From contig NW_027590242.1 in NCBI RefSeq assembly GCF_964213995.1, positions 124,001-188,000 of the forward strand: DNA of 64,000 nt. The letters run 5' to 3'. Position 1 is the stretch's first letter. Every line of letters starts with the position of its first letter. Shown in pieces: positions 28,660 to 62,373 of the stretch. The position numbers were made by a program, and so were the translations under genes. The notes beneath the pieces were generated by a model, which searched no databases, was not told where the DNA came from, and saw nothing but the letters and a program-made list of their open reading frames with translations. Origin of the DNA: Mustelus asterias. Taxonomy: Eukaryota.

Positions 28660-28848
28660 GGTTCGAGTCTGAACACCAGAAACAGAGAGTCATCACTGCC
28701 TGCATCAGATCTGCAATTAGAGAAGTTGAAACAGTCAGTGGGATGTTATGAGGTCGAAGGTGACTCCCTCTCTCCGCCCATTTTTACATCTTCAAACAGG
28801 CGCTTACTTCCATTAGAAGGGGATCGTGATATTTCATAAGTGATCAGA

Positions 28849-38049: not shown

Positions 38050-39370
38050 AAATCAGGTGCCAGGTGTGCGAGCATCTTACGTAATTGTCGCACTGTGCTC
38101 CTGGAGAGCCGCAGCCGGCGGCGGCACGTCGCCTCCGAGACAGCCTCAAATAAATTTCTGGGCCTGTACCACCTTGCCCTCTCAACCTTTTTGAGAGACT
38201 GCTCACCCACCTCCTGGACCTCAGTGACAGCTCCCTGCTGTCCTTCCTGAGGGACTGGTATTGACTGCTCCTGCGGTGGTCTCCCCACACCCGCCGCCTC
38301 CTGAGCCACCTCCTCTTCCTCCTCATCCACCACCATAATGGCCAGCTCCAAATCTATTAATCTAAAATCCATCTGCACAATGGGGTTTGGAAAGACAAAG
38401 AATTACTGATTCGTGTCATTGGAAGCATAGACCCAGCACCACCCTAATTCCTCACTTGGGCCAATACTCCCAGTTGTGGGTACTGTCAACACCACACAAT
38501 CCATGGTGCCGGACGCGACCTGATTCGGTTGTGTGAAATTCCCATCATGACAAATGCTGGCACAGATTATGCAGGTGAGTGTGCAGCTGTGGCACTGCGC
38601 ACCCTTGAACAATTGCCATATGTGCAACTGCAGTATCCGTTACAGGCATGGTCAGTGTCACGGGGCAGAGGCAGAGTTAAATCATCACCGGATAGGTGCC
38701 CAGTGACAGCAGATTCCATGCAGTCGAAGTGCGAACCACCGCACCCCGGCCTGGAGCAGCAGCTGCTTGATGTGGTTAAGCCTCAGTCAGCACATGGTGC
38801 ACTGGCCCCTCTCCCTCCCCCGGAAACACAGTACTCAGTGCAGTTCCTAACCACACCCCAGGTCCAGATAATACCACTGCACAGTGCCCTCAAGGGGAAG
38901 GCTGAGCAGCACTCCTTCAGGGCCCCTTTTCCACAAAGTTATAGCAGTGCCCTCTGGGGGAAAGCTGAGCAGAACTCATTCAGGGCCCGCCCACCTAGAG
39001 CTCTGAGAAAAAAGAAGCCCCCCCCCCCCACCCCAACACCAAATCCGCCTCCCCACCCCGCCACCCCAGGTATCACTGGTCCACCAGCCAGCACCGGAAG
39101 ACAGCCAGGAGGAACCCCACCAAGCACCTCCAGTGCCTGCCAGCAACATCCCCCACATTCCTTTCGCTTCAGGTCCACAGCAGTCACGAAGCTTTGCAAA
39201 ACACTGCTTCAGCCTTATTGGAATCATGGAGGTGACTCTCCCAGAAAAATCCAAGTGTGGCATTCGCGGGAAAGCTGGAATAATTCACGCTGGTTTAATC
39301 AGCGGGAGTTCAGATTAGAGTCTCCCACACTTTGTACAATGCAGAGCTCACCGGCGCGAATATCATTAAA
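38050..39370 (-). mobile_element. PIF/Harbinger DNA transposon fragment (transposase N-terminus plus upstream sequence; extent approximate)
   Basis: YRPRNLFEAVSEATCRRRLRLSRSTVRQLRKMLAHL resembles the HARBI1-type transposase N-terminus. Confidence 0.6.
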
Positions 39371-40237
39371 TCTCAGGGGGCGGGGCCTATTCGCAATGGG
39401 GGGTGGGCTGAATTCAGCGGGCCTCTGCGCATGCGCAGTGACCCCGCTCGCTCGCTGGTCAGCCCGGGACCCCCGCAGTGTTCCTCCCCAAAACCTCCCA
39501 CGATCGTGGCCGCCCTGTCCATTTGCGGGCCAACCCCGAACCCCCACGTCCCAGACCGATCTCCAATCTGGCTCCTTCCCACAGTGGGAATAATCTCTCT
39601 CTCTAACGACTCGGCCCAGATGTCTCAGAGTTTTAAAACCTCTCTTGAATCCTCTTTCTACGTTCTACGCTCGAAGAAACAGACCCAGCTGCTTCCATCT
39701 ATCCACAAAACGGTACTTCCTTATTTCTGGTGTCATTCTCTTGAATCTTTTCCACCCACGCAGCAATACTTTAACATCCTCCCTGCAGTACAGAGTGCCG
39801 AACTAGAACAATGCTCTACTTGAGGCAGAATCAGTTTTTACAGCCGTGTAAATCACATTTTAACACATTTGTGCACATACATTAAGATAAACTCTTTATA
39901 CTTTCCTCATTAGCAAGCACAGACGGTTAACATACGAAACAATCATATTGGAAAGCAAGTCTCATACCGATATAAATCTAAGCCTCTGATCAACCTAGAC
40001 AGTTCAGAGCAAACAAATAAGGTTTTTATTTAGAGTGCAGTCAGTGTTGCAATGTTAGACATGGGGCAACCATGTTATGCAAAGCGATATCGCAAAAACA
40101 GCAATGTGAGACAAGGAGACCAATGTTTTTATCTTTCAAAGCTGTCGTCTGAGAAACAGCGATTGTCCCCAGGAAACAAAGACAATGTCACACACTTCCT
40201 CATAGCCCTGTTCACAGTACTGGCCCTGTGATCTTTA

Positions 40238-40790
40238 CTGAGTTACAGACTGGATTCGAATTGATGGGTTCAGGATGGTCTATACATAGAATAACAAATA
40301 ACTGGGAGTGAGTTACAGACCGGAATCCAAGCAATGAATCTAAGCAGAGGGTTTATATATAGGATAAGATACCCGGGAGTGTGTTACAGACTAGAATCTA
40401 ATCAAGGGTTTGGTGTGGTTTATATATGGAATAACAGATACCTGGAAATGAGTTCCAAACTGCAATCCAATCTCGGGGTTTGGGGTGGTTTATCTATAGA
40501 ATAACAGATACCCATAAGTGAGTTAAAGACTGGGGTCCAATCGAGGATTTTGGAGTGGTTCACATAAAATGACAGATACCTGGGAGTGAGTTACAGAGTA
40601 GAATCTAATTGAAAGGTTCATGGTGGTTTATGTACAGAATAACAGATACCTGGGAGCGTCATAAACTGGAATCTAATCGAGGGTTTCTGGTGGTTTATAG
40701 AACAACAGATACCCGGGAGTGAGTTACAAACTGGAATATAATCAAAGGTTTTCGAGTGGCTTAAATGTAGAATACGCTGGGAGTGAATTT
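40238..40790. repeat. ~68-bp tandem minisatellite (~8 copies) in the predicted 3'UTR of the receptor gene
   Basis: Unit approximately ATAACAGATACCCGGGAGTGAGTTACAGACTGGAATCTAATCGAGGGTTTGGGGTGGTTTATATAGA. Confidence 0.9.
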
Positions 40791-40825
40791 GTACCTGTCT
40801 CACTTCCCAAATCTATCTTGTTGCC

Positions 40826-41316
40826 TTACAATGTTGTCTTAAGTGTCACCTCCTCTGCTTCTGCTGAATATGTTACTGCACTTTGACCATCAGGTCCCTG
40901 TCCTCTGAGGAGTTGGTAGTCAGCATCTTTTGGTCGTTTCTTCAGGCTTGTGTATGTTGAATCTTGTACTGGAACCATCTGGGGAGTGTTAGGCTTAGTC
41001 TCATCCTGCCTTTGGAGGCTTGCAGCAGGCCCAGCCTCGGCCTGCTCTCTTATTGAGCCTGAGCTCGGCCCAGACTCGGCCTGAATTCTGAGGCTTGCAG
41101 CAGGCCCAGCCTCGGCCTGCTCGCTTAGTGAGCCTGCGCTAGGCCCAACCTTATCCAGCCTTCTGAGGCCTGCAGCAGGCCCAGCCTCGACCTCCACTGT
41201 CAGTTGCGAAGACCGCTTTGGCCTGCCCTGCACCCGTTGGCCAGTGGCCTGGGCTTGCTCCTTGGTGTCAGGTTGAGTTCCAGGACTTAGCAAATCAGAG
41301 TAAATTCCTTCTTCTC
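40826..41316 (-). CDS. IgSF receptor last coding exon: cytoplasmic tail with ITAM
   Basis: Acceptor TTTCCTCTTTGCAG, phase 1; GEEGIYSDLL...DSTYTSLKKRPKDADYQLL...KTTL*. Confidence 0.8.
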
Positions 41317-42094
41317 CTGCAAAGAGGAAAGATCAATTTCAGTGGAAAAAGAAACCTAAGAACAAGGAGCAGTTGGATGCAGTGAGCTTGGTTCTCGTCC
41401 TGTGGCACGATTATGCTGATCCTATCAACTCTATTCTCCACTCCACTCCCCGTTCTCTTTTAGAAAATGCCCGAAAATCTCTCAAACTCTGTCTTGAATC
41501 TACTCAATGAATGATCATCTACCGCTCTCTGGGTTAGAGAATTTCAAAGACTTACCACTCTGACTGAAAAGCCTGAAATTTGATCCCATACCCTGAAACC
41601 GTGACCCCCATATTCCAGACTCCGCAACCGGGGGAGACATCCGGTAAGCATGTTGCACTTGAAACTGTGAGAGATCTGTATACGTTTCAAACAGATCACC
41701 TCTTACACTATTTGCTTCCAGAATACTAATCTCATATCAGCCAATATCCCTCAGCCCAGGAGTCAGTAGCAAAATGATTTTCTCTGTATCGCTCGAATGT
41801 GAGTTAATTCGGTAAGGAGACCAAAACTGTTCGCAGTATTCCAGCTGTGACAGTACCAACGTAGCTCTAACAAGAATACCTCACTCTAATACACCAAATG
41901 CTTGTGTAAAAGAGGCAAACATGGGTTTCGAGCTGATTCCTGTGCCCGCCTGTTTGACAAATCTCCAGGCAAGGGAGATCGGGAGGCAGATTGACACAGA
42001 GACAGTCTGAGCATCTCCAAAATGATAAAATTACACTCAGTAATGTTTACAAATAAAAAATTCCCTCTTACACTGCCCCACAACCAAACATTCC

Positions 42095-42712
42095 GAACAG
42101 GTACAGCACGAGGTTAGGGACAGAATACATCTCCGTGTACATAGTTCCCATCAAACACTCCCAGGACAGGTACCGCACAAGGTTAGATACAAAGTAAAAC
42201 TCCCTCCACACTGTCCTCATCAAACGTTCCCAGAACAGGTAGAGCACAGAGTAAGATACAGAGTAAAACTTGCTCTACACTGTCTCCATCAAACACTCCC
42301 AGGCCAGGTATAGCACAGGGTTAGATACAGTGTGAAGCTCCCTCGAGACTGTCCCCATCAAAAACTCCCAGGACAGGTACCGGACGGGGTTACATACAGA
42401 GTAAAACTTCCTCTACACTATCCCCATCAAACACTCATCGGACAGGTAAAGCACAGGGCTCGATACAAAGTAAACCTTCATCGATACTGTCCCCCATCAA
42501 ACACTTCCAGGACAGGTACAGCTCAGGATTAGATACAGAGTACAACTTCCTCCACACTATCCCCCATCAAACATTCCCAGGACAGGTACAGCACGGTGTC
42601 AGATACAGAGTAAAACTCCCTCTACACTGTCCCCCATCAAACACTCCCAGGACAGGTACAGCACGGTGTTAGATACAGAGTAAAACTCCCTCTACACTGT
42701 CCCCATCAAACA
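42095..42712. repeat. ~69-bp tandem satellite (~9 copies), intronic
   Basis: Unit ACAGGTACAGCACGGTGTTAGATACAGAGTAAAACTCCCTCTACACTGTCCCCATCAAACACTCCCAGG. Confidence 0.92.
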
Positions 42713-42825
42713 ATCACCGTTGTACCGGCGGAAAACTGCTGACCTCGTCGTACCCACAGTAATGGACAGCAGTTTGTTAGGCAGAGTCAGACAGTTTTGG
42801 CGTACACGCTGGATTGAACCCCTAC

Positions 42826-42858
42826 CTTGGTTTTGTCTCCTTTTCTTTTCATTTTTAC
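42826..42858 (-). CDS. IgSF receptor 33-nt juxtamembrane basic micro-exon (SKNEKKRRQNQ)
   Basis: TTTTGCCTCTTATGTCTAG acceptor and G|GTAGGG donor, phase 1-1, keeps frame. Confidence 0.7.
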
Positions 42859-42984
42859 CTAGACATAAGAGGCAAAATAAGAGAAAGTCAGTATCAGATG
42901 ATATTGAGTCTCTGTTATCACTCCCTCCCTCTCCCCACTCTCTCCCTCTGCTGCCACCCTCCATCCCTCTCCGACTAAAACCCC

Positions 42985-43230
42985 AGTTCCAGTGCGAGAT
43001 TCCCTCTTTGCCGCACAGCACCAGTGCGAGATCTCCTGTCTCTCACAGCCCAGTGTGACATCCCCTGTCCCTCACACCCCCAGTGCGAAATCTCCTGTCT
43101 CTCACACCCCCAGTGTGAGATCCCCTGTCTCTCGCACTCCCAGTGTGAGATCCCCTGTCTCTCATACCCTCGTGCGAGGTCCCCTGTCACTCATACCCCC
43201 AGTGCGAGATCCACGACCTCTCACACTCAA
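42985..43230. repeat. ~30-bp tandem repeat (~8 copies)
   Basis: Unit CAGTGCGAGATCCCCTGTCTCTCACACCCC. Confidence 0.9.
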
Positions 43231-43298
43231 TGTTCGGGAAGCATTCTGGGATTAAGAGGAGATTGTTTGCTGCTATGAGAACAGACCCAACACTTAAC

Positions 43299-43409
43299 TG
43301 CTCTGCTGATGGCACAGATAGAAGGTGATCAGCAAAGCCGCCGTATAAACTGCCAAGAAAATTGCAGTAAGAATAATCTTCACTTTCTGGTACTGAACTG
43401 AGGAAACAT
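43299..43409 (-). CDS. IgSF receptor transmembrane exon
   Basis: TTCTATTTACAG acceptor; DVSSVQYQKVKIILTAIFLAVYTAALLITFYLCHQQS; 111 nt, phase 1-1; donor GTTAAG. Confidence 0.8.
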
Positions 43410-44291
43410 CTGTAAATAGAACAATATGGAGAAAGAGAGTCGTTCAATAGCAAATGACAACAGCAGGACATTCTCTCACATGCAGTGTGTGTGCGCTTGT
43501 GTGTCTCCGTACATTTGTGTGTGTGCATATGTGTCGCGTGTGTGCAGCCTTCTTGAAACGCTGCAGTCCTCGTGCTGTGTGATCCACAATGCCATCGTGA
43601 TTGTTAAAATTGAGTGTCTCGCTGGGCTATTTCTGACAGCAGTTGAGAGTCAACCACATTGCTGTTTTTCGATTCACAGGTGGACCAGTCAGGGTAAGGA
43701 CTGCAGTTTTTCTTCCCTAAAGGACAGTAGTGAACCCAACCATTTCCAAAAATGGTTTCATGCCACCAGCAGATTCTTAAATCCAGATTTTTGTTATTGA
43801 ATACAAATACCACTGTCTGTGAGTGCGTGTGTGCGTGAGTGTATGTATGTGTGTGCACATAAGNNNNNNNNNNNNNNNNNNNNNNNNNNNNNNNNNNNNN
43901 NNNNNNNNNNNNNNNNNNNNNNNNNNNNNNNNNNNNNNNNNNNNNNNNNNNNNNNNNNNNNNNNNNNNNNNNNNNNNNNNNNNNNNNNNNNNNNTGTTTG
44001 TGTGCATGAGTATGTGTGTATGAATGAAAAAAAAATTCACACTCCGGATGTTGTGCCTCCCAGATGGTGGACAGATTGTGGGGAGTTAGGAAGCGAGTTA
44101 ATTGACACAAGACTGCTTCATAGTGTCTGAGCAGTATCCTTCCTTATATCATGACGCAGAATATATTACAGTGACAGTGGTAGAATTGATCATCAACCCG
44201 CAGGTTAGGGGGGGATTCAGTGTTGGTAACGTCACTGAATGGCAAGGATTTGTTCATGCATTTGAGATGAAGTAAAACGATAGGTTGTTAC

Positions 44292-44591
44292 CTGGTTGAA
44301 TTCTGATATTGTTGCTGTAGCCACAAGTTTCTCCCAAATCAACAGTCTGCTCGACTCCTGCTGCAGCTTCCTTGCATTTATAAACCGTTTCTCCAAGCTG
44401 GGAATCGAGTGTGACATCCAAAATCATCCCACCAAACTTCAGCTCATGCCTCTGATCACTGATAACCTTCTTGTTCCCTCTGAACCACTCAACAGCCGAG
44501 TCACGCAAGCTGGAACACATCAGTTCCACTTTGCATGTCCCACTGCTGGGCTGCTTTCTCTCGAGGCAAATCTGCAGCTCTCCAGCAGTAC
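44292..44591 (-). CDS. IgSF receptor C2-type Ig-domain exon (CD2/SLAM-like)
   Basis: 300-nt phase 1-1 exon (TAG|GT...CCAG|GTAACA); GTCKVELMC...VEWFRG...ETVYKC...DLGETC. Confidence 0.85.
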
Positions 44592-44649
44592 CTAGTGTGA
44601 AAAAGAGATTCGTAACTCGAGCAGCTGGCTGCAAGCAAAGATCTATTTT

Positions 44650-46010
44650 TATTCTCTCACAAGATGTGGGTGTCGCAGGCTGGAACAGCATTTATTGACC
44701 ATCTCTAATTGGTCTTGAGAAGGTGGTGGTGAGCTGCCTTCTTGAACCGCGTCAGTCCCCGTGATGTAGGTATGCCCACAGTGCTGCTCGAGAGGGTGTT
44801 TCAGGATTTTGACACAGCGACAGTGAAGGAACAGTGATATATTTCCAAGTCAGGATGCTGAGTGACTTGGAGGGGAACCTCCAGGTGGTGGTCTTTCTGT
44901 TACTCTTCTAGATGGTAGAGGTCGTGCAATTGAAGGGTGCTGTCGAAGGAATCTCAGTGAGTTCCTGCAGTGCATCGCGTAGAGGCTACTCATGGCTGCC
45001 ACTGTGCGTCAGTGGTGGAAGGAGTGAATGTTATTGGAAGGGCTGCTTTATCTTTGGCCGTGTAGAGCTTCATGGGTGTTGATGGAGCTGCACTTACCAA
45101 GGCAAGAGCAGACTATTCCATCATACTCCTGACTTGTGCCTGATGGTGGGTCTGTCTTCACAAAGGAAGACATGAATAATGTACCAAAAGCTCTGAGAGA
45201 AACAAGTTTTAATGAAGTGCTGAAGGAAATCAGTATTTATAGCGAAATGGTTTGGGGGAAAATAATGGGATTGAACAAAGAACAAAGAAAATTACAACAC
45301 AGGAATAGGCCCTTCGGCCGTCCAAGCCTGCACCGACCATGCTGCCCGACTGAACTAAAGCCCCCTATCCTTCTGGGAACCTTATCGCTGTATTCCCATC
45401 TTATTCATGTATTTGGCAAGATGCCCCTTAAAAGTCACTATCGTATCTGCTTCCACTGCCTTCCCCAGCAGCGAGTTCCAGGCACCCACCACCCTCTGTG
45501 CAAAGCACGTGCCTCATACATCGCCTTTAAACCTTGCCCCTCGCAACTTAAACCTATGCCCCCGAGTAATTGACTCTTCTACTGTGGGAAAATAGCGTCT
45601 GACTATCCATTCTGCCCCCTTCATAATCTTGTAGAGGTTGATCAGTTCGCCCGCTCAACGTTTGTCGTTCCAGCGAGAACAAACTAAGATTCTCCAACCT
45701 CTGCTCACAGCTAATGTCCTGCATACCTGGCAACATCCTGATAAAAGGGTGGCAGGTAAGAAGATTGGATAGGATAGGATAGGATAGGATAGGATAAAGA
45801 CAGCAAAGAATGACAAAAAGATTAATAAAGAGGGAGAAGGAGAGAAAGTTATCGAGGAATATGAGAAATTGAAATATAGTATATAATGTAACAATTTCCA
45901 CAGATACTTAAAAAAGAAAAGTCAACAAAGTGAGCATTGGTCCTATAGAAAGTATGTCTGGGGAGTTGAAAACAAAACAATAAGGAGATAGTAGATGAAC
46001 TGAACCAGTA
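44650..46010. mobile_element. Mixed old LINE (CR1/L2-like) fragments and (GGATA)n microsatellite at ~45766-45796
   Basis: CR1 3' tail at ~45270-45750 (-); SVFTKED-type fragment at ~45150 (+). Confidence 0.6.
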
Positions 46011-46024
46011 TTATAAAAAAAGGT

Positions 46025-46340
46025 TGGTGGCACGGTGGTTAGCATTGCTGCCTCATAGCGCCAGGGACTCGGGTTCAATTTTGGCCTCGGGTAACTGTCT
46101 GTTTGGAGTTTGCACGTTCTCCCCATGTCTGCATGGGTTTTCTCCGGATGTTCCGTTTCCTCCCACAGTCCAAAGATGTGAGGGTTATGTTGATTGGCAA
46201 TGGTAAATTGACACTCTGGTCAGGGGAATTAGCAAGGTTAATATGAAGGATGAGGGGAATAGGGTCTGGGTGGGATTGTGGTCGGTGGCAGACTTGATGC
46301 TCTCAATGGCTTCCTTCTGCACTGCAGGCATTCTATTCTA
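46025..46340 (+). mobile_element. HE1-type SINE
   Basis: TGGTGGCACGGTGGTTAGCATTGCTGCCTCA head; TTCTA tail. Confidence 0.8.
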
Positions 46341-49300
46341 TGAAATTTCTTCTGCACCCTCTCCAAAACCTCCACATCCTTCTGGTAGCGTGAAGACCAG
46401 AATTGAACACGATATTCCAAGTGCTGCCTAACTAAGGTTCTATAAAGATGCAACATGACTTGACAATTTTTAAACTCAATGCCCCGGCCGATGAAGGCAA
46501 GCATGCTGTATGCATTCTTGACTACCTTATATAAAACTACAGCACAAAATAGGCCGTTCGGCCCCACAGGTTGTGCCGAACATATCCCTACCTTCTAGGC
46601 CTACCTATAACCCTCCATCCCATTAAGTCCCATGTACTCATCCAGGAGTCTCTTAAAAGACCCTATTGAGTTTGCCTCCGCCACCACTGACGGCAGCCGA
46701 TTTCACTCGTCCACCACCCTCTGTGTGAAAAAGTTCCCCCTAACATTTCCCCTGTACCTACCCCCCCCAGCACCTTAAACCTGTGTCCTCTCGTAGCAGA
46801 GATTTCCACCCTGAGAAAAAGCCTCTGAGAGTCCACTCGATCTATGCCTCTCAACATCTTATACACCTCTATAAGGTCTCCTCTCATCCTACGTCTCTCC
46901 AAGGAGAAAAGACCGAGCTCCCTCAGCCTATCCTCATAAGGCATGCCAGTCAATCCAGGCAACATCCTTCTAAATCTCCTCTGCACACTTTCAATCTTTT
47001 CCACATCCTTCCTATAATGAGGCGACCAGAACTGAGCACAGTACTCCAAGTGTGGACTGACGAGGGTCTTATATAGCTGCATCATTATCCCCGGACTCCT
47101 AAACTCAATCCTTCGATTGATAAAGCCAGCACACCATACTCCTTCTTAACCACCTCCTCCACCTCTGGGGCCGATTTTAGAGTCCTATGGACCCGGACCC
47201 CAGGCTTCTGATCCACTACAGTACGAAGAGTTTTTCCCTTTATATTGTACTCCTTCATCCCATTTGACCTGCCAAAATGGACCACTACGCATTTATCTGG
47301 GTAGAAGTCCATCTGCCACTTCTCCACCCAGTCTTGCATCCTATCTATGTCCCTCTGTAACTTCTGACATCCCTCCAGACTATCCACAACCCCACCAAAC
47401 TTTGGGTCGTCGGCAAACTTACCAACCCATCCCTCCACGTCCTCATCCAGGTCATTTATGAAAATGACAAACAGCAAGGGTCCCAGAACAGATCCCTGGG
47501 GCACACCACTGGTGACCGACCTCTATTTAGAAAAAGACCCATCTGTACCCACTCTCTGCCTCCTCTGGGCAAGCCAGTTCTGGATCCACAGGGCAGCAGC
47601 CCCTTGGATCCCATGCCCTCTCACTTTTTCTAGAACCCTTGCATGGGGAACCTTATCGAACGCCTTGCTAAGATCCATATAAACCACATCTACCGCTTTC
47701 CCTTCGTCAATGTGTTTAGTCACATTTTCGAAGAACTCCACCAGGCTCGTAAGGCACGATCTGCCTTTGACAAAGCCATGCTGAGTATTCTTGAGCATAC
47801 TAAACCTCTCTAAATGCTCATAAATCTTGTCCCACAGGATCTTCTCCATCAGCTTACCAACCACTGAGGTTAGACTCACCAGTCGGTTATTTCCTGGGCT
47901 ATCCTTATTCCCCTTCTTGAAAATAGGAACCACATCCGCAATCCTCCAATCCTCCTACACCTCTCCCGTCTCCATCGACCTTCTCCACCTGCGTTGCCAC
48001 TTTCAGTGACTTGGATATCTGCACACCCAGATCCCTCTGCCTGTCAATATTCTTAAGGGTTCTGCATTTACTGTATTTTTCCCATCTATATTAGACTTCC
48101 AAAATGCATTACCTCACATTTGTCCATTAAACTCCATCTGCCATCTCACCGCCCAAGTCTCGAACCATTCTATATCCTGCTGTATCCTCTGACAGTCGTC
48201 ACTGCGATCCACAATTCCTCCAATCTTTGCATCGTCTGCAGACTTACTAATCAAACCAGTTACATTTCCCTCCAAATCATTTATATATATTTCAAGCATC
48301 AAAAGTCCCAGCATTGATCCCTGAAGAACGCCACTTGTCACAGCCCTCCATTGAGAAACGCACCCTTCCACTACTACCCTCTGTCTTCTATGACCGAGGC
48401 AGTTCTGCATCCATCTTGCCAGCTGATCTCTGATCCCGTGCGACTTAACCTTCTGTACCAGTCTGCCATGAGGGACCTTGTCAAAGGCCTTACTGAAGTC
48501 CATGTAGACAACATGCACTGCCCTACCCTCATCAATCACCTTCGCCACTTCCTCGAAAAACTCGATTAACTAAGTGAGACACGACCTCCCCATCACAAAA
48601 CCATGTTGTGACTCACTAATACGTCCACTTATTTTCAAGTGGGAGTAAATCCTGTCTCGAAGAATGCTCTCCAATAATTTCCCCACCATTGGCTGAAGGC
48701 TCACCGGCCTTTAATTACCTGGTTTATCCTTACTACCCTTCATAAACAAAGGAACAACGTTATCCAATCTTCTGGGACCTCCACTGTACTAGCGAGGATA
48801 CAAAGATTTCTCTCAAGTCCTGAGCAGTTTCCTGCCTTGCATCTCTCAGTATTCTGGAGTGTTTCCCATCAGGCCCCGTGGACTCGACTAATTTAGTGCT
48901 TCTCAAGAACCCAATATTGCCTCCTTTTTGGTCTCATCATGACCCAAACTATCTACACACACTTCCCCAGACTCATCATTAAGCAAGTCCTCCTCTTTTG
49001 TGAAAACTGACGCAAAGTATTCATTTAATACCGCGCTCATTTCCTCTTTTCCTCCAGCTCCATGCATAGATCCCCTCCCCTGTCCTCCTCCAGGTTTCTT
49101 GCTTTCTCTTCATATATGCATAAAAAGGATTTTCCTTAATCCTGCTGGCCAATTACTTTTTGTTACCCCTTTTAGCCCTCCTTACTCCTTGCTTGAGCTT
49201 CTTGCTACTTTTCTTGTATTCCACTTCTCCTTCGTGTGTTCCCAATCTCCTAGCCTTGACAAATGCTTCCTTTTTCTCCAGCCAAAAGAGAACATGCTGG

Positions 49301-51080
49301 AAAATCTCAGCAGGTCTGGCCGCATCTGTAAGGAGAGAAAAGAGCTGACGTTTCGACTCTAGATGACCCTTTGTCAAAGCTAAAAGACATAGAAAGTCAG
49401 AGATATTTATAGTGCAGGGTGAGGAAATGAAACATGAGTCATCGCCACAGGAACCATGAGCTTCCTTTTTTCTCTTTGACTAGGCTCACAATATCTCTCA
49501 CTATCCAAGTTTGCTGAAACTTGCCATAGTTACCCTTCAGCCTTATAGGAATGTGCCAGTCCTGAATTCCTACCAATTTGCAGTTGAAAACCTCCACATG
49601 TCAGAAATTTATTTGCCCTCAAATATCTGCCCCAATCTATATTCTTCAATTCCTGCCTAATAATGTTGTAATTCGCCTTCCCCTAATTTAGCACCTTCAC
49701 TTGAGGACTACACTTATCTTTATCCATCAGTACCTTAAATCTTACTGAATTGTGGTCACTGTTCCCAAACTGCTCTCCTCCTGAAACGTCGTCACCCGGC
49801 CAGGCTCATTCCCCAATACCAGGTCCAGTATGGCTCCTTCCCGAGTTGGACTATCGACATAATAGTTCAAGACATCCTCCTGGATGTGCCTTACAAACTC
49901 TGCCCCATCCACGTCGCGAGCACTAAGTAGTCCCAGTCATTTTGGGGAAGTTAATATCTCCCTCCACAGCAACCCTGTTACTTTTGCACCTTGCCAAAAT
50001 CCGCCTATATATCTGTTCCTCTGTCGCTGGCTTTTAGGGGGACTACAGTAAACCCCCAACGTTGTGACTACACCCTTCCTATTCCTGAGCTCTACCCATG
50101 TTGCCTCGCTGTATGAGCTCTCTGAGGTGTCCTCCCACAATACATTTGTGATATTCTCCAGTAGTGTAACTCCCCCACCCCTTTTAGATCCCCCTCTATC
50201 CCACTGAAAACATCTGCATCCTGGAACGTAAAGCTGCCAATCCTGTCCTTCCCTTAGCCAAGTCTCTAATGGCAACAACATCATAATTCCAAGTATTAAT
50301 CCAAGCCCTCAGTTCTTACCTGTTACACTTCCCGCATTGAAACAAATGTACATCAGTCCACCAGAACCTCTTTGATGAGCAACCACACTCTGCCTGCTCT
50401 TTCTCTGAATTTTACTGGACCTACTCTCCAGTCCTCCTTAAGTGGGCGGCATGGTGGCACAGTGGTTAGCACCACTGCTTCCCAGCGTGATGGACCAGGG
50501 TTCGATTGCCTTCTTGGGTTACTGTCTGTGTGGAGTTTGCACGTCCTCCCCATGTCTGCGTGGGTTCTTTCAGGGTGTTCCGGTTTCCTCCCACAGTCTG
50601 AAAGACGTGCTGGTTAGGTGCATTGATCCGAACAAGTGCCAAGTGCGGTGACTAGGGGAATTTCACCGTCACTTAATTGCAGTGTAAATGTAAGCCTTAT
50701 TTATGACTAATAAATGAACTTTTACTTTAAGTTAATTCACCTTTGCTTTGGTTCCTATCCCCTGCCAAAGTACTTTAAATCCTCCCGTGTGATACTAGCA
50801 AACCTCCCGGTCAGAATATTAATGCCCCTCCAGTTTAGATACAAGCCGTCCTTGGACAGATCCCACCTGTCCCGTAAGAGATCCCAGTGGTCCAGATATC
50901 TAAACCCTTCCCCGTACACCAGTTGTTGAGCCACATGTTGAGCTGTACTACCTTCCAATTTCTAGCCTCACTGGTACATAGCGCAGGTAATAATCCTGAG
51001 ATTACAATCCTAGAGGTCCTGCTTTTTAACATTCTATCTAACTCCCTAAACTGCTGCAGGATCTCATCACTCTTTCTAAA
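46340..51080 (-). mobile_element. Long decayed CR1 LINE (ORF1 esterase to ORF2) with nested younger CR1 (~46535-47980), Penelope fragment (~49280-49460) and SINE (~50445-50715)
   Basis: Colinear CR1 peptides in ORFs 50835, 49937, 48114, 46238; second set in 47523, 47085, 46663. Confidence 0.8.
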
Positions 51081-51139
51081 ATGGTCTCTGGGGCCTTATA
51101 ATCTTCATCTCAGAGTACATAACGGAACAGCCCTAGAGG

Positions 51140-51785
51140 GGGGTGGCACGGTGGCACAGTGGTCAGCACTGTTGCCTCAAAGCTCGAGCTTTAATTCCAG
51201 CCACGATCACTGTCTGTTTAGAGTTTACACGTTCTCCCCTTGTCTGCGTGGGTTTCCTCCGGGTGCCCCGGTTTCCTCCCACAGTCAAAAGTTACAGAGT
51301 TAAAGGTTCCAACAGTGCAGAAGGAGGCCATTCAGCCCATCAAGTCTGCAAGGAACGCAATCCCACCCAGGCTCTATCCCCGTAACCCCATGTATTTAAC
51401 CAAGCTAGTCCCTCTGACACTATGGGGCAATTTAGCATGGCCAATCCACCTAACCCACACATGCTTGGAATGTGGGACGAAACCGGAGCACCTGGAGGAA
51501 ATCCACGCAGACACGGGGAGAACGTGCAGACTCCGCACAGACAGTGACCCAAGCCAGGAATCGAACCCAGATCCCTGGCGATGTGAGGCAGCTGTGCTAA
51601 CCACTGTGCCACCGTGCCGCGTGCAGATTAGGTTGATTGGCCATACCAAATTGACCCGAGTGTCAGTGGATTGGCAGGGTAAATATGTGGGGTCATGGGA
51701 ATAGGGTCTGGGTGGCATTGTGGTCGGTGCAAACTCGATAGGCCAAACGGCTTCCTTCAGAACTGTATGAATTCTGTGATTCTAT
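51140..51785 (+). mobile_element. HE1-type SINE interrupted by a second, inverted SINE (~51290-51619)
   Basis: Plus-strand head stops at CCCACAGTCAAAA and resumes at GTGCAGATTAGGTTGATTGGCC. Confidence 0.8.
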
Positions 51786-51789
51786 GAAA

Positions 51790-53080
51790 TAGGGACACCT
51801 TTGGTGTCATTTTCCAGTTCTTTGGACTCTGGACTGGTTCCTGCAGATTGGAGGGTAGATAATGTAAGCCCGCGATTCAGAAAATGGGGTAGTGAGAACA
51901 GGGTACTATGGACCAATGAGCCTGACATCAGTATTGGCGAAGGAGCTGGAGTCCGTTTATCAAGTATTTCAAAACTCAGCAGTTGGAAAACAGTGGTATA
52001 ATCAGACAATGCCAGCATCTATTTACAAAGGAGAAATCATGCTTGATGAATCTATTGGAATTATTTGAGAATGTAACTAGTAGAGGAGAACTAGAGAAGG
52101 TGGTTTATTTGGACTTTCAGAAGGCTTTTAACAAGTTAGTGTCTTGAGATAGATAGAAAGCTGGTTAGCAGGCCGGAAACAGAGTTCGCATAAATGGGTC
52201 TTTTTTCGATTGGCAAGCAGTGACTCGTGGACGACTGCAGGGATCGGTGTTGGGATCCCAACTGTTCACATAAAAGATTGATGATTCGGAAGAGGGAACG
52301 AAATGTATTAGCTCCAAGTTTGCAGATGACAAATTATGGTGGGAGGGTGAGCTGTGAGGAGAATGCAGGGATTCTTTAACCTTATTTGGACAGGCTGAAT
52401 GAGAATGAGTGCGCATACGAATGGCAGATGCAGTATAACGTGGACAAATGTGAGATTATCCACTTTGGTGGCATTAATAGGAAGACAGATTATTGTTTGA
52501 ATGGTTGTAAACTGAGAGAGGTGGATTCTCACCGAGACCTTGGTGCCCTCGTGCATCAGTTGCCGAAAGTAAACACTGAGGCACTTAGCAGGCAGTAAAG
52601 AAGGCAAATAGTATGTTGGACTTCATAGCGAGAGATAAGAGTGTCGGAATAGGGATGTTTTATTGCAATTGTGTCGGGTGTTGGTGCGGCCACACTTGGA
52701 GTATTGTGTGCAGTTTTGGTGTCCGTATCTGAGGAAGGGTGTCCTTGCTACAGGGGGCAAGCAGCAAAGGGTTACCAGGCTCATTCCTGGAGTGGCAGGT
52801 CCGTCATGTGAGGAGAGACTAAATCAGTTAGGCTATATTCACTGGGGTTTAGAAGAGTGAGAGGGGAACTCATAGGAATTATTAAATGGCGGGAGAGTCC
52901 AGAATTAGGTGTCGAACTTTGAGGATAAGGGATGAACTGATTGAGATTGAGGTGATTAAAAATGTCTTCACCCAGAGAATGGTGAATCTGTGGAATTCAA
53001 TGTGACAGCAAGGAGTTAAGGCCAAAACGTTGTGTGATTTCAAGATATTAGATATAGCTCAAGGGATCAAGGGATATGCG
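51790..53080 (+). mobile_element. Degenerate CR1 LINE RT/3' region
   Basis: SGLVPADWRVDNV; EWQMQYNVDKCEIIHFG; LVRPHLEYCVQFW. Confidence 0.8.
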
Positions 53081-53379
53081 GGGGGTGGGGGGGGGGAGAG
53101 GTGGTGGGGGGATGGTTGAGGGAGGGGGTGATCAGTTTCTGAGTATCTGACTGAGAAGATGAGGGTTATGTTGGAACAATGAGAGGCAAACATAAGAAAT
53201 ATTTCTAAAATCAACAAATGAGACGCCATCAAATCTGAATTTCAAATTGAGACTGAGGGTTTTTAAAATCTTAATCAAAGGGACTTCAGGAAAAGGTGAG
53301 TAGATGGTGTTGATCCCAAAGAAGACAAGATCATGTTGAAAAGCTCAACAGCTTTATACTGCCTGTCCTCAACTGCCTC

Positions 53380-55430
53380 ACACTCAGACCCTTCCTCACA
53401 CTCACACACACCCCTCTCACCCTCCTTCACACACCCTCTACCATATAAGCACCCTCCATCGCAAGCTCACCACCTCTCCCTCACATTATCTCCCTCACAC
53501 ACCCTTTCCCTCACCCCTTCTCCCTCACAGACAGTTCCTTACGCACCCTCACTTATACCCTCACCCGCCCTCACAATCACACCCACCCTCGCACCCTGTC
53601 CTGCTTATACCTTCTCCTTCCCTCACATCCTTTCCTTCACACCCGCTTCCTCATGTGTATTCTCCTTCATACTCACCCCCTCTGCCACACTCTCCCCTTC
53701 CCTCTCCCTCACACACTCTCCCTCACACTCACACGATCCTTCAGGCTCACCGTTCCTCTCCCTCAGTCACATTCAATCACGCTGGTGCTCACTCACAACT
53801 CACACCCTTTCCCTCTCATACCTTCTCCCATGCTCTCATCCTTTCCTGCACACTCGCCCTCCTCCGCACTTACGCCGCCCCACGCCCTCATCCCCTCTCC
53901 CCCACACTCACCCTCTTCCCGCACTCTCGCCCCCTGCCCTCACACGCCCTCACCCCCTCCCCCACCCTTCCCTGCACTCACCCCCTCCCTCATCCTACCA
54001 CTCCCATTCCCCCACCCCGTTCCCCGCACTCTCGTGTCATAGAGTTTTACAGCATGGAAACAGGCCCTTCTGCCCAACTAGTCCCTGCCGCCCTTTTTTT
54101 TAACCACTAAGCTAGTCCCAATTACCTGCATTTGGCCCATATCCCTGTCGACCCATCTTACCCATGTAGCTGTCTGAACGCTTTTTAAAAGACAAAATTG
54201 TACCCGTCTCTATACTATCTTTGGCAGCTTGTTCCAGACACTCACCACCCTCTGTGAAAAACGTGCCCCTCTAGACAATTTTGTGTCTCTCCCCTCTCAC
54301 CTTAAACCTATGCCCTCTAGTTTTCCCCTACCTCTGGGAAAATAGGTTGATTAGCTCACTGATCTATGGCCCTCATTGCCTTTTAGACCTCTATTCTCAC
54401 CCCTAAGTCCTCCTAATTCTCCTGCTCTTCAAGGAAAAATGTCCCAGTCTATCCAGCCTCTCCTTATAACTCAAACCATTAAATCCTGGTAACATCCTAA
54501 TAAATCATTTCTACATTCTTTCTAGTTTAATAATCTCCTTTATGAAATAGGATGACCAGAACTCTACACAGTATTCCAAGTATGGCCTTGCCAATGTTTT
54601 GTACAAATTCAACAAGACGTCCCAACTACTGTATTCATTGATCTAACCGAGGGAACCAAGCATGCCGAATGCCTTGTTAACCACTCTGTCCTCCCCCTCC
54701 TCTCCACTCACCCCCTCCCCCGCACTCTCACCGTCCATCACAGGCACCCTCCATCACAGGCACCCTCCATCATAGACACTCTCCATCATAATCACTCTCC
54801 ATCATAGTCACTCTCCATCACAGTAACCGTCTCTCACACACCCCTTCCTCATGCATCCTCTGCCACTCCCTCTCTCTCAGGCCCTAATTCAATTGATGTG
54901 GTTCACTCCATCTTTTCACTTTCTCACCTCACATCCTCCCCTCACTCTCTCACTTTTGCTGAATCTTTCTGTGACTCCCTCCCTCTCAATGCCTCTTTCT
55001 CACTCATCCTCTCTCACTCCCTTCCTCCTACTCCCTCTCCTCACTCACACCCCTTCCCAATTTCTTCCTTTCCTCCCTCACCACTGTCTCCCTCATTCAA
55101 CCCTCCATCACTCAAAACTCCCTTCCTTACTACTCAATCTATAACTCACTCACCACTTCTTCCCTGTCCTCCCTCACTCTACCCCTCACCCCTTCACCAC
55201 TCCCTCCCTCCATCACTCTTTCCCTCCCTCACTCACAACTCCCTTCTTCACTCACAATTCCCTCCCTCAGTCACTCACCACTCCCTCCCTCACTCACTCA
55301 CGAGTCCCTCCGTCAATCTTTCCCTCACTCACTCCATTCCCTCTATGTATAACTCACTCACCAATCCCTCCGTCACTCTTTCCCTCCCTCACTCACCACT
55401 CCCTCCCTCACTCACCACTCCACAGTGACA
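53380..55430. repeat. C/T(A)-rich low-complexity tract, interrupted by a CR1 3' end (~54035-54690, -)
   Basis: CCCTCA/CTCAC degenerate repeats. Confidence 0.85.
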
Positions 55431-57067
55431 GCAGGATCATGGTTCCCCACAGCTTTCCATACACTGGATCCATTGGTTGATTCCTGCGGATTGGAAGGTG
55501 CAGAGAGATGATGGACGAACGAGGCTGAGAGAATCTTCAGAAACTGCTGACGAATTGAATCCGTTCAGTGTAAGAATTGAAGGGTTTGGTCCAGAAACTT
55601 GCGATAGCATCTGAGACTTGGTCACTTCCTGAGAAAAGGTGTCAGCTGATAACATCCACAAAACCAAAATAGACGCCAGAGCACAAAATTCTTCTCGGAA
55701 CTGACCACGACAAAGAGAGAGAGAGAAACAGAGTTAAAGCAACAGCAGAAGGGGAAAGGGAGAAGGAGTAACAGAAAGAGGAACACAAAGGGAAACAGAC
55801 AGGAGAGATGAAAAAGCAGCAGCAAAGATTGAGAAACAGAAATAGAGATAGAAAGAAACAAAATGGCAGAGAAACTCGTCGAGAGAAACAAGTTAATACA
55901 GAAAGGCAAGCAGAGAGACGTGGGCAGACAGAAGCAGAGGCCAAAAGAGAGAGACAGCAACAGAGAGAGAGAGAGAGAGACAAACATAGAAGCAGGCAGA
56001 AAGAGGGCGCGGCACGGAGGGAGAGGGCGATAGGCAGGGAGAGAGAGGAAGAAAGGCAGAGAAAGTCGGAGAGAGGGAGGCAGGGAGAGAGGGAGGGAGA
56101 GAGAGAGAGAGAGACAGGCAGAGAGAGAGAGAGGGGCAGGGAGAGAAAGGGAGACAGGGGCAGGGACAGAGAGGGGGCAGCGAGAGAGAGGGACAGAGAG
56201 AGAGAGGGGGAGCAGGGAGGGAGAGAGAGAGAGATGGAAAGAGGCAGGATGAGAGAAAGGCAGGGATAGAGAGAGAGGCAGGGAGTGAGAGAGAGAGAGA
56301 GATAGAGAGAGAGAGAGATAGAGAGAGAGAGACAGAGGGAGGGAGATAGAGAGAGACAGGGAGAGGGGGAGAGAGGCAGGGAGAGAGTTAGAGAGAAGCA
56401 GGGAAAGAGAGGGAGAGGCAGGTAGAGAGAGAGTGAGAATGAGAGGCAGGGAGAGGGAGAGAGAGGCAGGGAGAGAAAGAGAGAGGCAGGGAGAGAGAGA
56501 GAGGCAAGGAGAGAGAGAGGGGGGAGGGTCAGGGAGAGCGAGAGAGAGGCAGGGAGAGAGAGAGAGGGGGGGAGACAGGGAAAGGCATGGAGAGAGAGAG
56601 GCAGGGAGAGAGAGAGAAAGAGACAGGGAGAGCGTGAGAGAGAGGCAGGTGGATAGAGAAAGAGAGGAAGGGGAGAGGGAGAGAGAGAGGAAAGAGAGAG
56701 GCAGGGAAAGAGAGGAGAGAGGGAGAGAGAAGCAGAGTGAGAGAAAAGGTGAGATGCGAAGAGAGAGAGAGGCAGGGAGAGAGCGAAAGCGAGGCACGGA
56801 GTGAGAGAGAGAGGCAGGGACAGAAAGTGAGAGACGGGGGGGGGGGGGGAGAGGCAGGGAGAGAGAGGCCGAGAGAAAGGGACAGAGAGAGGCAGGAGGA
56901 CAGAGAGCGAGAGGCAGGGACAGAGAGGAAGAGAGGCAAGGAGACAGGGAGAAAGAGAGGCAGGGAGAGAGAGAGTGAGGCAGGGAGAGAGAGAGAGTGA
57001 GGCAGGGAGAGAGCGAGTGAGAGCGAGAGAGAGGCAGGTACAGAGAGAGAGAGGCGGGGGGGGGGGG

Positions 57068-57101
<34 letters not shown>

Positions 57102-61765: not shown

Positions 61766-61821
<56 letters not shown>

Positions 61822-62035: not shown

Positions 62036-62073
<38 letters not shown>

Positions 62074-62336: not shown

Positions 62337-62373
<37 letters not shown>

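What the first reader, a model, noticed from the sequence alone, without database searches (positions are those of the whole stretch)
40826..44591. Unannotated ITAM-bearing CD2/SLAM-like receptor gene next to a shark TCR V cluster
Seen: four minus-strand exons (44292-44591, 43299-43409, 42826-42858, 40826-41316) have AG acceptors, GT donors and phase-1 junctions. They splice into one open frame: Ig domain, uncharged TM helix (IILTAIFLAVYTAALLITFYL), basic stop-transfer segment, and a ~160-aa tail containing D-x-x-YTSL-x8-YQLL. Knowledge: a C-x5-C...W...YxC...C pattern is typical of the membrane-proximal C2 domain of CD2/SLAM proteins, whose tails normally carry ITSMs (TxYxxI/V) or Pro-rich motifs rather than ITAMs. 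CD3, CD79, FcR-gamma and DAP12 ITAM chains have polar or charged TM residues that I do not see here. Inference: a self-signalling activating receptor linked to the TCR alpha/delta V array, relevant to ideas of ancestral antigen-receptor/SLAM linkage. The ORF track only shows it in pieces.
Basis: partly seen in the sequence, partly recalled or inferred. Interest (0 to 1): 0.85.

Follow-up and report, generated by a model that had tools for sequence, protein, structure and literature searches.

The report
Shark single-Ig receptor with own ITAM
This is a real, expressed shark gene for a small cell-surface protein with one antibody-like domain and a built-in activation signal, one of a little-studied gene family found only in sharks and rays, and it sits beside T-cell-receptor gene segments.

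Summary
The four minus-strand exons are real, with the stated coordinates, splice sites and phases. A fifth exon, the leader (55473-55416), lies 10.8 kb upstream.

All five exon peptides occur in order in RefSeq 'uncharacterized protein LOC144486041 [Mustelus asterias]' (330 aa). So the gene is annotated, but unnamed and unstudied.

An RNA-like contig joins all three junctions between the four exons. It splices out the intron that holds the N gap.

The protein is leader, one Ig domain, TM, then tail. It has no V domain, so it does not have CD2/SLAM architecture. The Ig domain is nevertheless closest to the C2 domain of shark SLAM-like proteins, with all four cysteines in register.

YxxL-x7/8-YxxL is present in 13 of 19 family proteins, in 7 of 8 species with a tail on record. 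Pfam's ITAM model passes its cut-off in the Mobula ortholog.

M. asterias has nine named loci.

The scan's first readers noted look-alike genes next to TCR V segments on four other pieces of this genome. I did not check those notes.

Verdict: a new, elasmobranch-restricted member of the known class of Ig receptors that carry their own ITAM. Signalling is inferred, not shown.

The parts
55416..55473 (-). Leader exon, coding part. ATG at 55473-55471, 19 codons plus 1 base (phase 1), donor GTGAGT at 55415-55410.
   Evidence: tblastn of the M. asterias paralog leaders onto the window. Sequence read. The peptide is residues 1-19 of P0031.
44592..55415 (-). Intron 1, 10,824 nt, holding reverse-transcriptase fragments of non-LTR retrotransposons (46238-48548).
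   Evidence: ORF lists. Pfam RVT_1 on 47523-47930. No V-like ORF of 45 aa or more on either strand in 44600-53400.
44292..44591 (-). Ig exon, phase 1/1, 99 full codons. A SLAM/CD2-type C2 (I-set-like) domain with Cys at exon residues 8, 19, 25, 72 and 89.
   Evidence: AlphaFold model with mean pLDDT 79.9 and seven strands. VIA Z of 9-10 to NCAM2, CEACAM1 d4 and SLAMF6 d2. HMM comparison. Covered by the X1 contig from 44292 to 44549.
43410..44291 (-). Intron 2, 882 nt as assembled, containing the assembly gap 43864-43994 flanked by CA-rich simple sequence.
   Evidence: The X1 contig joins 43409 to 44292 with no letters between.
43299..43409 (-). Stalk and TM exon. A conserved Lys is followed by a 22-residue uncharged core, IILTAIFLAVYTAALLITFYLC, with an invariant Cys at the cytosolic end.
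   Evidence: Covered by the X1 contig.
42826..42858 (-). 33-nt basic stop-transfer exon (KNEKKRRQNQ). It is skipped in a RefSeq isoform of a paralog (P0032).
   Evidence: The X1 contig aligns to 42825-42851.
40826..41316 (-). Cytoplasmic tail exon, 162 codons plus stop TAA at 40828-40826.
   Evidence: X1 contigs cover 40746-41277 in pieces. Homologs found.
41291..41314 (-). Membrane-proximal acidic YxxL motif, E-E-G-I-Y-S-D-L, which is hemITAM-like.
   Evidence: Y173, I172 and E170 are nearly invariant and S174 is invariant in 10 aligned proteins. It is present in 17 of 19 proteins scanned.
41015..41193 (-). Coding tandem repeat, 75 nt (25 aa) x 2.4 copies. Copy number varies between paralogs.
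   Evidence: Tandem Repeats Finder. Gaps in the alignment.
40907..40963 (-). ITAM-like motif, D-S-T-YTSL-x8-YQLL.
   Evidence: Regex scan. L292 and L304 are invariant and Y289 and Y301 are in 9 of 10 sequences. Chance control.
40841..40873 (-). Conserved C-terminal block T-Y-S-A-E-A-E-E-V-T-L.
   Evidence: V315, T316, A319 and V324 are nearly invariant and S318 is invariant. The Tyr is Phe in Mobula.

Best explanation
The locus (40826-55473, minus strand) is a five-exon gene. It is identical in protein to RefSeq LOC144486041 of the starry smooth-hound, Mustelus asterias.

It encodes a 330-aa type I membrane protein:
- a signal peptide;
- one Ig domain of the SLAM/CD2 C2 type;
- a short stalk;
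- a TM helix with an uncharged core, a conserved Lys at its outer edge and an invariant Cys at its inner edge;
- a basic stop-transfer stretch;
- a roughly 170-aa, mostly repetitive tail.

The tail carries a membrane-proximal acidic YxxL (EEGIYSDL) and, near the C-terminus, an ITAM (YTSL-x8-YQLL).

The gene belongs to an uncharacterised family found so far only in sharks and rays, with nine named loci in M. asterias. The family most likely arose from a SLAM/CD2-like V-C2 gene that lost its V exon.

Inferred mechanism, not shown: clustering of the ectodomain leads Src-family kinases to phosphorylate the ITAM tyrosines. A Syk/ZAP-70-type kinase docks through its tandem SH2 domains, so the chain signals activation by itself, without a separate adaptor. 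The sharks' extra Cys in strand A may give a disulfide-linked dimer.

The gene, its splicing, its relatives and the conservation of the motifs are shown. The cell type, the ligand, dimerisation and signalling are inferred.
For: - Exons, splice sites and open frames.
- Exact match of all five exon peptides to P0031 only, out of 10 M. asterias proteins compared.
- Spliced contig over 3 of 3 junctions between the four exons in run X1, with zero depth in the unique intron bins, while X2-X4 cover 29-30 of 30 bins.
- Family members in 9 elasmobranch species, all with a leader directly followed by one Ig domain.
- A phmmer search of 1.84 billion representatives found single-Ig relatives only in elasmobranchs (6 of the 22 hits).
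- The Ig domain is nearest to shark SLAM-like C2 domains, at 24.5-37.6 bits against 19.6 or less, with four Cys in register.
- ITAM regex in 13 of 19 proteins.
- The +3 Leu residues are invariant and each Tyr is present in 9 of 10 sequences.
- Pfam ITAM scores 25.4 bits against a cut-off of 22.2 in the Mobula ortholog.
- Chance of the pattern is 351 in 200,000 shuffles.
- No acidic residue in the TM core.
Against: - Pfam's ITAM model gives no hit on the window's own tail even at E up to 10. The x8 spacing is at the upper end of the consensus.
- Heterodontus has lost the second Tyr, and three M. asterias paralog models end before the motif.
- The first half, S-x-Y-x-x-L, also fits an ITIM consensus in Mustelus and Scyliorhinus.
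- The leader-to-Ig junction was not seen in reads, because the X1 contig ends at 44549. It rests on the RefSeq model and on conservation.
- X1 is only guessed to be RNA, comes from another organism label, and differs by about 2-7% from the window.
- The Ig domains of the paralogs are nearly identical (1-6 differences over 330 aa). That is not what a diversified ligand-binding family usually shows.
- The conserved boundary Lys and the highly conserved TM hint at partner chains.
- There are no data on tissue, ligand or phosphorylation.
Confidence: 0.6

Rival explanations
1. It is a signalling or accessory subunit of a multi-chain receptor, in the manner of CD79 or CD3, rather than a ligand-binding receptor. 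The small invariant Ig domain and the conserved TM would dock it to a partner chain, possibly an antigen-receptor-type chain encoded nearby. The ITAM would then transmit for the complex.
For: - The TM and juxtamembrane region is among the best conserved parts. QYQKVKIILTAIFLA is identical between Mustelus and Scyliorhinus. L138, L145, T148 and C152 are invariant, and a Lys precedes the core in all 10 sequences.
- The Ig domains of the 330-aa paralogs are nearly identical.
- The single-Ig-plus-ITAM layout matches CD79 and CD3 (recalled).
- An odd number of Cys in sharks allows an interchain bond.
- The gene lies beside TCR V segments.
Against: - There is no acidic TM residue, which CD3, CD79, FcR-gamma and DAP12 use for assembly (the rule itself is recalled).
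- The Pfam CD3-delta Ig_4 hit is below its cut-off (17 against 30.1 bits). Titin-like proteins score higher on the same model.
- No partner is known.
- The tail is long (about 170 aa), unlike the short tails of CD3 and CD79.
Confidence: 0.2
2. It is an inhibitory or dual-function receptor. The tyrosines would recruit SHP-1, SHP-2 or SHIP (ITIM-like S-x-Y-x-x-L, or 'inhibitory ITAM' behaviour) rather than Syk-family kinases.
For: - STYTSL fits [SILV]xYxx[ILV] in Mustelus and Scyliorhinus, and SDYEHL / SDYQHL fit it in Scyliorhinus.
- The nearest relatives, the SLAM family, are switch-type receptors (recalled).
Against: - The -2 residue is Pro in Stegostoma, Heterodontus and M. birostris, so the ITIM consensus is not conserved, while the paired YxxL spacing is.
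- There is no TxYxx[IV] in any tail.
- Pfam ITAM passes its cut-off in Mobula.
Confidence: 0.12
3. This copy is a non-functional or redundant duplicate in a recently amplified, repeat-rich block. The motifs would be inherited and carry no function at this locus.
For: - There are nine near-identical loci, several on small unplaced contigs.
- Three paralog models are truncated.
- DNA runs show a second form about 8% different.
- The X1 transcripts share variants with that other form, so expression of this exact copy is not proven.
Against: - All five exons are open with intact splice sites.
- The protein is full length and differs by only one residue from the copy on the 20.4-Mb contig.
- The family has been conserved since the shark-ray split.
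Confidence: 0.08

Closest known systems
SLAM/CD2 family (SLAMF6/NTB-A, Ly-9, CD84, CD2, CD48), including the shark 'Ly-9-like' and 'SLAMF5-like' and the ray 'HEPACAM2-like' proteins
   Same: - The Ig domain has the membrane-proximal C2 pattern C-x5-C..W..YxC..C, with all four Cys in register.
- It has the best per-domain HMM scores outside the family.
- SLAMF6 domain 2 is among the tied top structural matches: Z 9.1, rmsd 2.1 over 77 residues.
- It is a type I membrane protein with Tyr motifs in the tail.
   Different: - It has no N-terminal V domain, so it lacks the ligand-binding half.
- It has no ITSM and carries an ITAM instead.
- The tail is one large exon.
- The extra disulfide pair is more conserved than the canonical one: C19 and C89 are invariant, while C25 and C72 are lost in Stegostoma and Rhincodon.
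Ig receptors that carry their own ITAM: Fc-gamma-RIIA, CEACAM3/CEACAM19/20, teleost NILTs
   Same: They have an uncharged TM core and an ITAM on the receptor's own tail, so they are self-contained activating receptors. For NILTs I saw only the abstract lines of PMC3022915 in the listing. For CEACAMs I read passages of PMC4079198. Fc-gamma-RIIA is recalled.
   Different: - Their ectodomains are V-type (NILT, CEACAM3) or two FcR-type C2 domains.
- No sequence relationship was detected here.
- The shark tail also has an acidic proximal YxxL and 25-aa repeats.
CD79a/CD79b and CD3 gamma/delta/epsilon
   Same: Leader, one Ig domain, TM and an ITAM tail. The exons are phase 1. A Cys near the stalk could form an interchain bond. 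There is a weak Pfam Ig_4 (CD3 delta) hit at E 0.009.
   Different: - There is no acidic TM residue.
- There is no CxxC stalk motif.
- The tail is about three times longer.
- The Pfam hit is below its cut-off and non-specific.
- CD79b is only a mid-table structural match (Z 8.3).
hemITAM receptors (Dectin-1, CLEC-2, CLEC9A)
   Same: The membrane-proximal [DE][DE]-x-I-Y-S-[DH]-[LV] is a single YxxL preceded by acidic residues, as in the hemITAM consensus (recalled).
   Different: Those are type II C-type lectins with the motif at the N-terminus. Here the motif sits on a type I Ig protein together with a full ITAM. The resemblance was not tested.

Membership tests
CD2/SLAM family | N-terminal V-set domain (without the canonical disulfide) preceding the C2 domain | tested here: not met
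   The leader exon splices in phase to the single Ig exon. P0031 has the exon peptides at residues 1-19 and 21-119. All 9 species' models show the leader followed by one Ig domain. There is no V-like ORF of 45 aa or more in 44600-53400. The junction itself was not seen in reads.
CD2/SLAM family | Membrane-proximal C2 domain with two disulfides (C-x5-C ... YxC ... C) | tested here: met
   The family HMM aligns to shark Ly-9-like, SLAMF5-like and HEPACAM2-like C2 domains at 24.5-37.6 bits, with all four Cys and the Trp in register. P0014 hits SLAMF6 at 1.3e-11 and CD2 at 5.8e-7 in the PDB.
CD2/SLAM family | ITSM (TxYxx[IV]) in the tail (SLAM subfamily) | tested here: not met
   The regex scan found no ITSM in any cytoplasmic tail of 19 proteins. 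The single match, in P0034, lies inside the TM.
ITAM-bearing immunoreceptor chains | Yxx[LI]-x6-8-Yxx[LI] in the cytoplasmic tail | tested here: met
   The window has YTSL-x8-YQLL. The pattern is in 13 of 19 family proteins. The Leu residues are invariant and each Tyr is in 9 of 10 sequences. It arises in 351 of 200,000 shuffles.
ITAM-bearing immunoreceptor chains | Match to the curated Pfam ITAM model PF02189 | tested here: inconclusive
   There is no hit on the window's tail at E up to 10, nor on P0028 or P0026. The Mobula ortholog P0011, with x7 spacing, scores 25.4 bits against a cut-off of 22.2.
ITAM-bearing immunoreceptor chains | Phosphorylation-dependent recruitment of Syk/ZAP-70 | not testable with these tools
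   This needs biochemistry.
CD3 / CD79 / FcR-gamma / DAP12 signalling subunits | Acidic residue inside the TM helix for assembly with a basic partner | tested here: not met
   The TM cores listed contain no D or E in any of the 17 proteins with a TM. A Lys precedes the core.
Rearranging antigen-receptor genes (TCR/Ig) | V-set domain with a flanking RSS | tested here: not met
   The gene's Ig exon is C2/I-set-like and is flanked by splice sites. The neighbouring V segments do have an RSS, but they are separate genes.

The most novel reading that the evidence does not exclude
The family is a SLAM-derived, V-less ITAM chain that has been embedded in, and co-amplified with, the TCR alpha/delta V array of elasmobranchs. 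It would work in T cells as a lineage-specific signalling partner or co-receptor of antigen receptors, docking through its conserved TM and boundary Lys. That would be a functional link, and not merely a physical one, between an antigen-receptor locus and a SLAM-type gene.
Probability: 0.1. Interest if true: 0.75.

Novelty: new member of a known kind. Interest (0 to 1): 0.45.

Why it matters
Cartilaginous fish are the oldest living vertebrates with TCR- and Ig-based immunity, and few of their non-rearranging immune receptors have been described.

This family has four notable properties:
- It has been conserved since the shark-ray split.
- It is amplified in one species.
- It is built from a SLAM-type C2 domain without the V domain.
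- It carries its own ITAM.

The family gives a compact, testable activating receptor. It is also an example of domain loss turning an adhesion or co-stimulation type molecule into a self-signalling chain.

Its repeated position next to TCR V segments is shown for this window only. If it holds, it would be useful for annotating shark TCR loci, where such genes can be mistaken for relics, and for questions about what travels with V arrays during block duplication.

The finding does not change how ITAM receptors are understood to work.

Tried and rejected
- **Upstream V exon.** The ORF lists of 44600-53400 (45 aa or more) and of the whole window (90 aa or more) show only retrotransposon and low-complexity frames. 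tblastn with the family proteins then placed the leader at 55473-55416. The two-domain model is rejected.
- **Pfam.** On the exon peptides, only a sub-threshold Ig_4 hit appears on the Ig exon, with nothing on the TM or tail exons.
- **PDB by sequence.** With the Ig exon and with a family profile, only weak generic I-set hits appear (NCAM2, myomesin, VEGFR2). No SLAM or CD2 hit appears directly.
- **Fold search.** Foldseek found no match at E of 0.001 or better; the best were titin/obscurin at about 1e-3. VIA-align gave many ties at Z 8-10, including NCAM2, MDGA1, CEACAM1 d4, SLAMF6 d2 and LAG-3 d2. So the fold says 'Ig, I-set/C2' and cannot pick a family.
- **CD3/CD79 identity.** Rejected: there is no acidic TM residue and the Pfam hit is non-specific.
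- **Relatives that share the tail on another ectodomain.** A region search with the S. canicula protein (residues 121-290) returned only the family (10 hits). The profile search also returned only the family (11 hits). That search missed several of its own input proteins, so the tool is patchy.
- **Synteny in other species.** Not tested.
- **Literature.** Six full-text searches found no paper on this family or its LOC or XP identifiers. From PMC4079198 I read passages only. For all other papers I saw only the search listing. They might hold gene lists that include these LOCs.
- **Joined model.** All searches from the window were done exon by exon.
- **Expression.** Run X1 is labelled RNA only by a guess. 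Tissue and species are coded. No more reads could be laid, so the leader-Ig junction could not be looked at again.


Full report
**What is in the sequence**

- Ig exon 44591-44292.
- TM exon 43409-43299.
- A 33-nt basic exon, 42858-42826.
- Tail exon 41316-40826, ending in TAA.

Each exon has an AG acceptor and a GT donor, and every junction is phase 1. The in-frame translations are open. They give a 99-residue Ig domain, a stalk with the TM string IILTAIFLAVYTAALLITFYLC, the stretch KNEKKRRQNQ, and a 162-residue tail with D-S-T-YTSL-x8-YQLL.

**The gap**

The N run at 43864-43994 lies inside the intron between the Ig and TM exons. It is flanked by CA-rich simple sequence. A contig of run X1 joins 43409 directly to 44292 with no letters between. 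The matching RefSeq protein also runs straight from one exon to the next. So the reading frame does not depend on the gap, and only the intron's true length is unknown.

**Transcripts**

The look-up of sequencing runs gave one run guessed to be RNA (X1, organism A) and four DNA-like runs of organism B. I laid X1 and three of the DNA-like runs on 40700-44700.
- X1 has depth over the tail, TM and Ig exons.
- X1 has zero depth in the unique intron bins 41370-41771, 41906-42039, 42978-43245 and 43916-44183.
- X2 and X3 cover 30 of 30 bins, and X4 covers 29 of 30.
- One 472-nt X1 contig carries all three junctions:
  - 41315/6 to 42825/6, with ends CT..AC (GT..AG on the minus strand).
  - 42851 to 43298, where 7 letters are left unaligned; this fits 42858|43299.
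  - 43409 to 44292.

There are limits to this evidence:
- The contig stops at 44549, so the exon upstream of the Ig exon is not seen.
- X1 differs from the window by about 2-7%. It shares several variants with a second form that the DNA runs show at about half depth.
- The transcripts may therefore come from a paralog, an allele or a close species.

They still prove the exon structure.

**The fifth exon and the identity of the gene**

A search with the tail exon found annotated shark proteins of 258-280 aa that begin with a signal peptide directly followed by this Ig domain.

tblastn of those proteins onto the window placed the leader at 55473-55405. The sequence there reads ATG at 55473, 19 codons plus one base, then GTGAGT. 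The split codon G|GT gives Gly.

A profile search then returned P0031, 'uncharacterized protein LOC144486041 [Mustelus asterias]', 330 aa. All five exon peptides are exact substrings of it, at residues 1-19, 21-119, 121-156, 158-167 and 169-330. Of the ten M. asterias proteins compared, only P0031 contains all five.

So the window is, or is identical to, that RefSeq locus. The gene is annotated, but unnamed.

Intron 1 is 10.8 kb long and holds reverse-transcriptase fragments.

**The family**

Members, all called 'uncharacterized', come from these species:
- M. asterias: nine named loci on six contigs, four of them on one 20.4-Mb contig.
- Scyliorhinus canicula and S. torazame.
- Stegostoma tigrinum.
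- Rhincodon typus (a fragment).
- Heterodontus francisci.
- Mobula birostris and M. hypostoma.
- Narcine bancroftii.

A phmmer search of the Ig exon against 1.84 billion cluster representatives gave 22 hits at E of 0.001 or better. Six of them are single-Ig relatives, and all six are elasmobranch. The rest are multi-Ig proteins. Neither the tail-region search nor the profile search found the tail on any other ectodomain.

**What kind of Ig domain**

Pfam gives only a sub-threshold CD3-delta Ig_4 hit. Titin-like proteins score higher on that same model. PDB sequence searches give weak I-set hits.

The AlphaFold model has mean pLDDT 79.9 and seven strands. It matches many I-set and C2 domains at Z 8-10, including CEACAM1 domain 4 and SLAMF6 domain 2. 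The fold therefore cannot discriminate between families. Sequence can:
- The best small non-family hits are P0010 (ray 'HEPACAM family member 2-like') and P0014 (Heptranchias 'Ly-9-like', in one cluster with 'SLAM family member 5-like').
- P0014 hits SLAMF6 (1.3e-11), CD2, CD48 and CEACAM in the PDB, and passes Pfam Receptor_2B4.
- An HMM of the family's Ig domain scores the C2 domains of these proteins at 24.5-37.6 bits each (11 domain rows). Titin- and obscurin-like domains score 19.6 bits or less.
- The alignments put C-x5-C, the Trp, YxC and the last Cys in register.

Within the family, the invariant cysteines are the 'extra' pair, exon residues 19 and 89. The canonical pair, 25 and 72, is lost together in Stegostoma and Rhincodon. 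Cys8 is absent in rays.

But the protein has no V domain, so it is not a CD2/SLAM-type receptor by architecture.

**The tail**

A regex scan of 19 family proteins finds Yxx[LI]-x6-8-Yxx[LI] in 13:
- Four of the seven M. asterias proteins scanned.
- Both S. canicula isoforms.
- S. torazame.
- Both Stegostoma isoforms.
- Both Mobula species, which each have two such motifs.
- Both Narcine isoforms.

It is absent from these six:
- Three M. asterias models that end earlier.
- Both Heterodontus proteins, where the second Tyr is replaced.
- The tail-less Rhincodon fragment.

Other findings on the tail:
- In a 10-sequence alignment, the two +3 Leu residues are invariant and each Tyr is present in 9 of 10.
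- The Mobula motif with x7 spacing passes Pfam's ITAM cut-off, at 25.4 against 22.2 bits.
- The window's x8 version gives no Pfam hit.
- The pattern arises in 351 of 200,000 shuffles of the tail. Three of four Tyr in a YxxL/I context arises in 56 of 20,000 shuffles.
- No ITSM occurs in any tail.
- An ITIM-like S-x-Y-x-x-L overlaps the first half of the motif in Mustelus and Scyliorhinus only.
- A second conserved motif, [DE][DE]-x-I-Y-S-[DH]-[LV], lies about 20 residues after the TM. It resembles a hemITAM (consensus recalled).
- Between the two motifs lies a 25-aa repeat whose copy number varies between paralogs.

That an x8 spacing can work in a bona fide ITAM is recalled knowledge (the second ITAM of CD3 zeta). 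I did not test it here.

**The TM**

However, a Lys directly precedes it in all ten aligned proteins. L138, L145, T148 and a Cys at the cytosolic end are invariant. This keeps open an association with partner chains.

**Surroundings**

Six V-set ORFs lie at 5.2-28.7 kb, in both orientations. Two of them were searched against the PDB, and their hits include TCR alpha and delta V domains among antibody V domains. Three were read at their 3' ends and have a heptamer, a spacer of about 23 nt and an ACAAAAAC-type nonamer. So the gene does sit 12-36 kb from germline V segments of TCR alpha/delta type.

First-stage notes of this scan describe look-alike ITAM genes next to TCR V segments on four other pieces of the same genome. 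That fits the nine RefSeq loci, but I could not check those pieces.

**How it most likely works**

- Shown: a conserved, spliced, five-exon gene for a single-Ig type I membrane protein with a conserved paired YxxL motif.
- Inferred: it is an activating receptor that signals through its own ITAM by way of Src-family and Syk-family kinases, possibly as a disulfide-linked dimer.

The rivals, with my confidence in each:
- A CD79/CD3-like subunit of a larger complex (0.2).
- An inhibitory or dual-function receptor (0.12).
- A redundant copy at this particular locus (0.08).

**Novelty**

Six literature searches found nothing on this family. The databases hold only automatic 'uncharacterized' models.

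The kind of molecule is well known: an Ig receptor with its own ITAM, as in Fc-gamma-RIIA, CEACAM3 and the teleost NILTs. New here are the lineage-restricted family, its V-less SLAM-type domain and its place beside TCR V segments. I rate it a new member of a known kind, of moderate interest.

Noticed in passing
window 5214-5603(-), 10385-10687(+), 13866-14243(+), 20021-20431(+), 21877-22263(-), 28340-28705(-): Six V-set gene segments lie in mixed orientation. Three were read at their 3' ends and carry a heptamer, a spacer of about 23 nt and an ACAAAAAC(C/T) nonamer. PDB hits include TCR alpha and delta V domains. The last segment gives only a short V-set match and may be a relic.
   Followed up: partly
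window 15315-18320(+): An open 1001-aa ORF with endonuclease and reverse-transcriptase domains (Pfam Exo_endo_phos, RVT_1). It looks like an intact non-LTR retrotransposon ORF2. Further RT pieces lie at 30033-31400(-), 33191-34684(+) and, inside the gene's first intron, 46238-48548(-).
   Followed up: partly
window 53300-63000: About 10 kb of CT/GA-rich low-complexity DNA just upstream of the leader exon. It gives long Ser/Leu/Pro or Arg/Glu frames on both strands and is broken by several N gaps. The promoter region of the gene abuts it.
   Followed up: no
window 42057-42712 and 42989-43226: Two intronic tandem arrays. The first is a 69-nt unit x 9.4, whose words have enormous depth in all four runs, so it is a genome-wide repeat. 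The second is a 30-nt unit x 7.9.
   Followed up: no
P0001, P0002, P0004 (M. asterias paralogs): Three RefSeq paralog models end inside the repeat region, before the ITAM. They keep only the proximal EEGIYSDL motif. Two end in the same ...ESGLVQAQ. These could be natural short-tailed forms or model artefacts.
   Followed up: partly
P0026/P0007 (Stegostoma), P0006 (Rhincodon): The orectolobiform orthologs lack both canonical Ig cysteines (B and F strands) but keep the three others. So in this family the non-canonical pair is the conserved one.
   Followed up: partly
P0012 (Narcine isoform X2), P0032 (M. asterias LOC144486687 isoform X2): Two RefSeq isoforms stand out. One has no TM segment and may be soluble. 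The other skips the 33-nt basic exon.
   Followed up: no
window 40700-44700, runs X2-X4: The DNA-like runs of organism B carry two forms over exons and introns: one identical to the window and one about 8% different, at about half depth each. At a few sites (for example 40989 and 40999) all runs differ from the window.
   Followed up: partly
window 38529-39593(+): A 354-aa Pro-rich ORF with no Pfam match lies between the V cluster and the gene. It is probably repeat-derived.
   Followed up: partly
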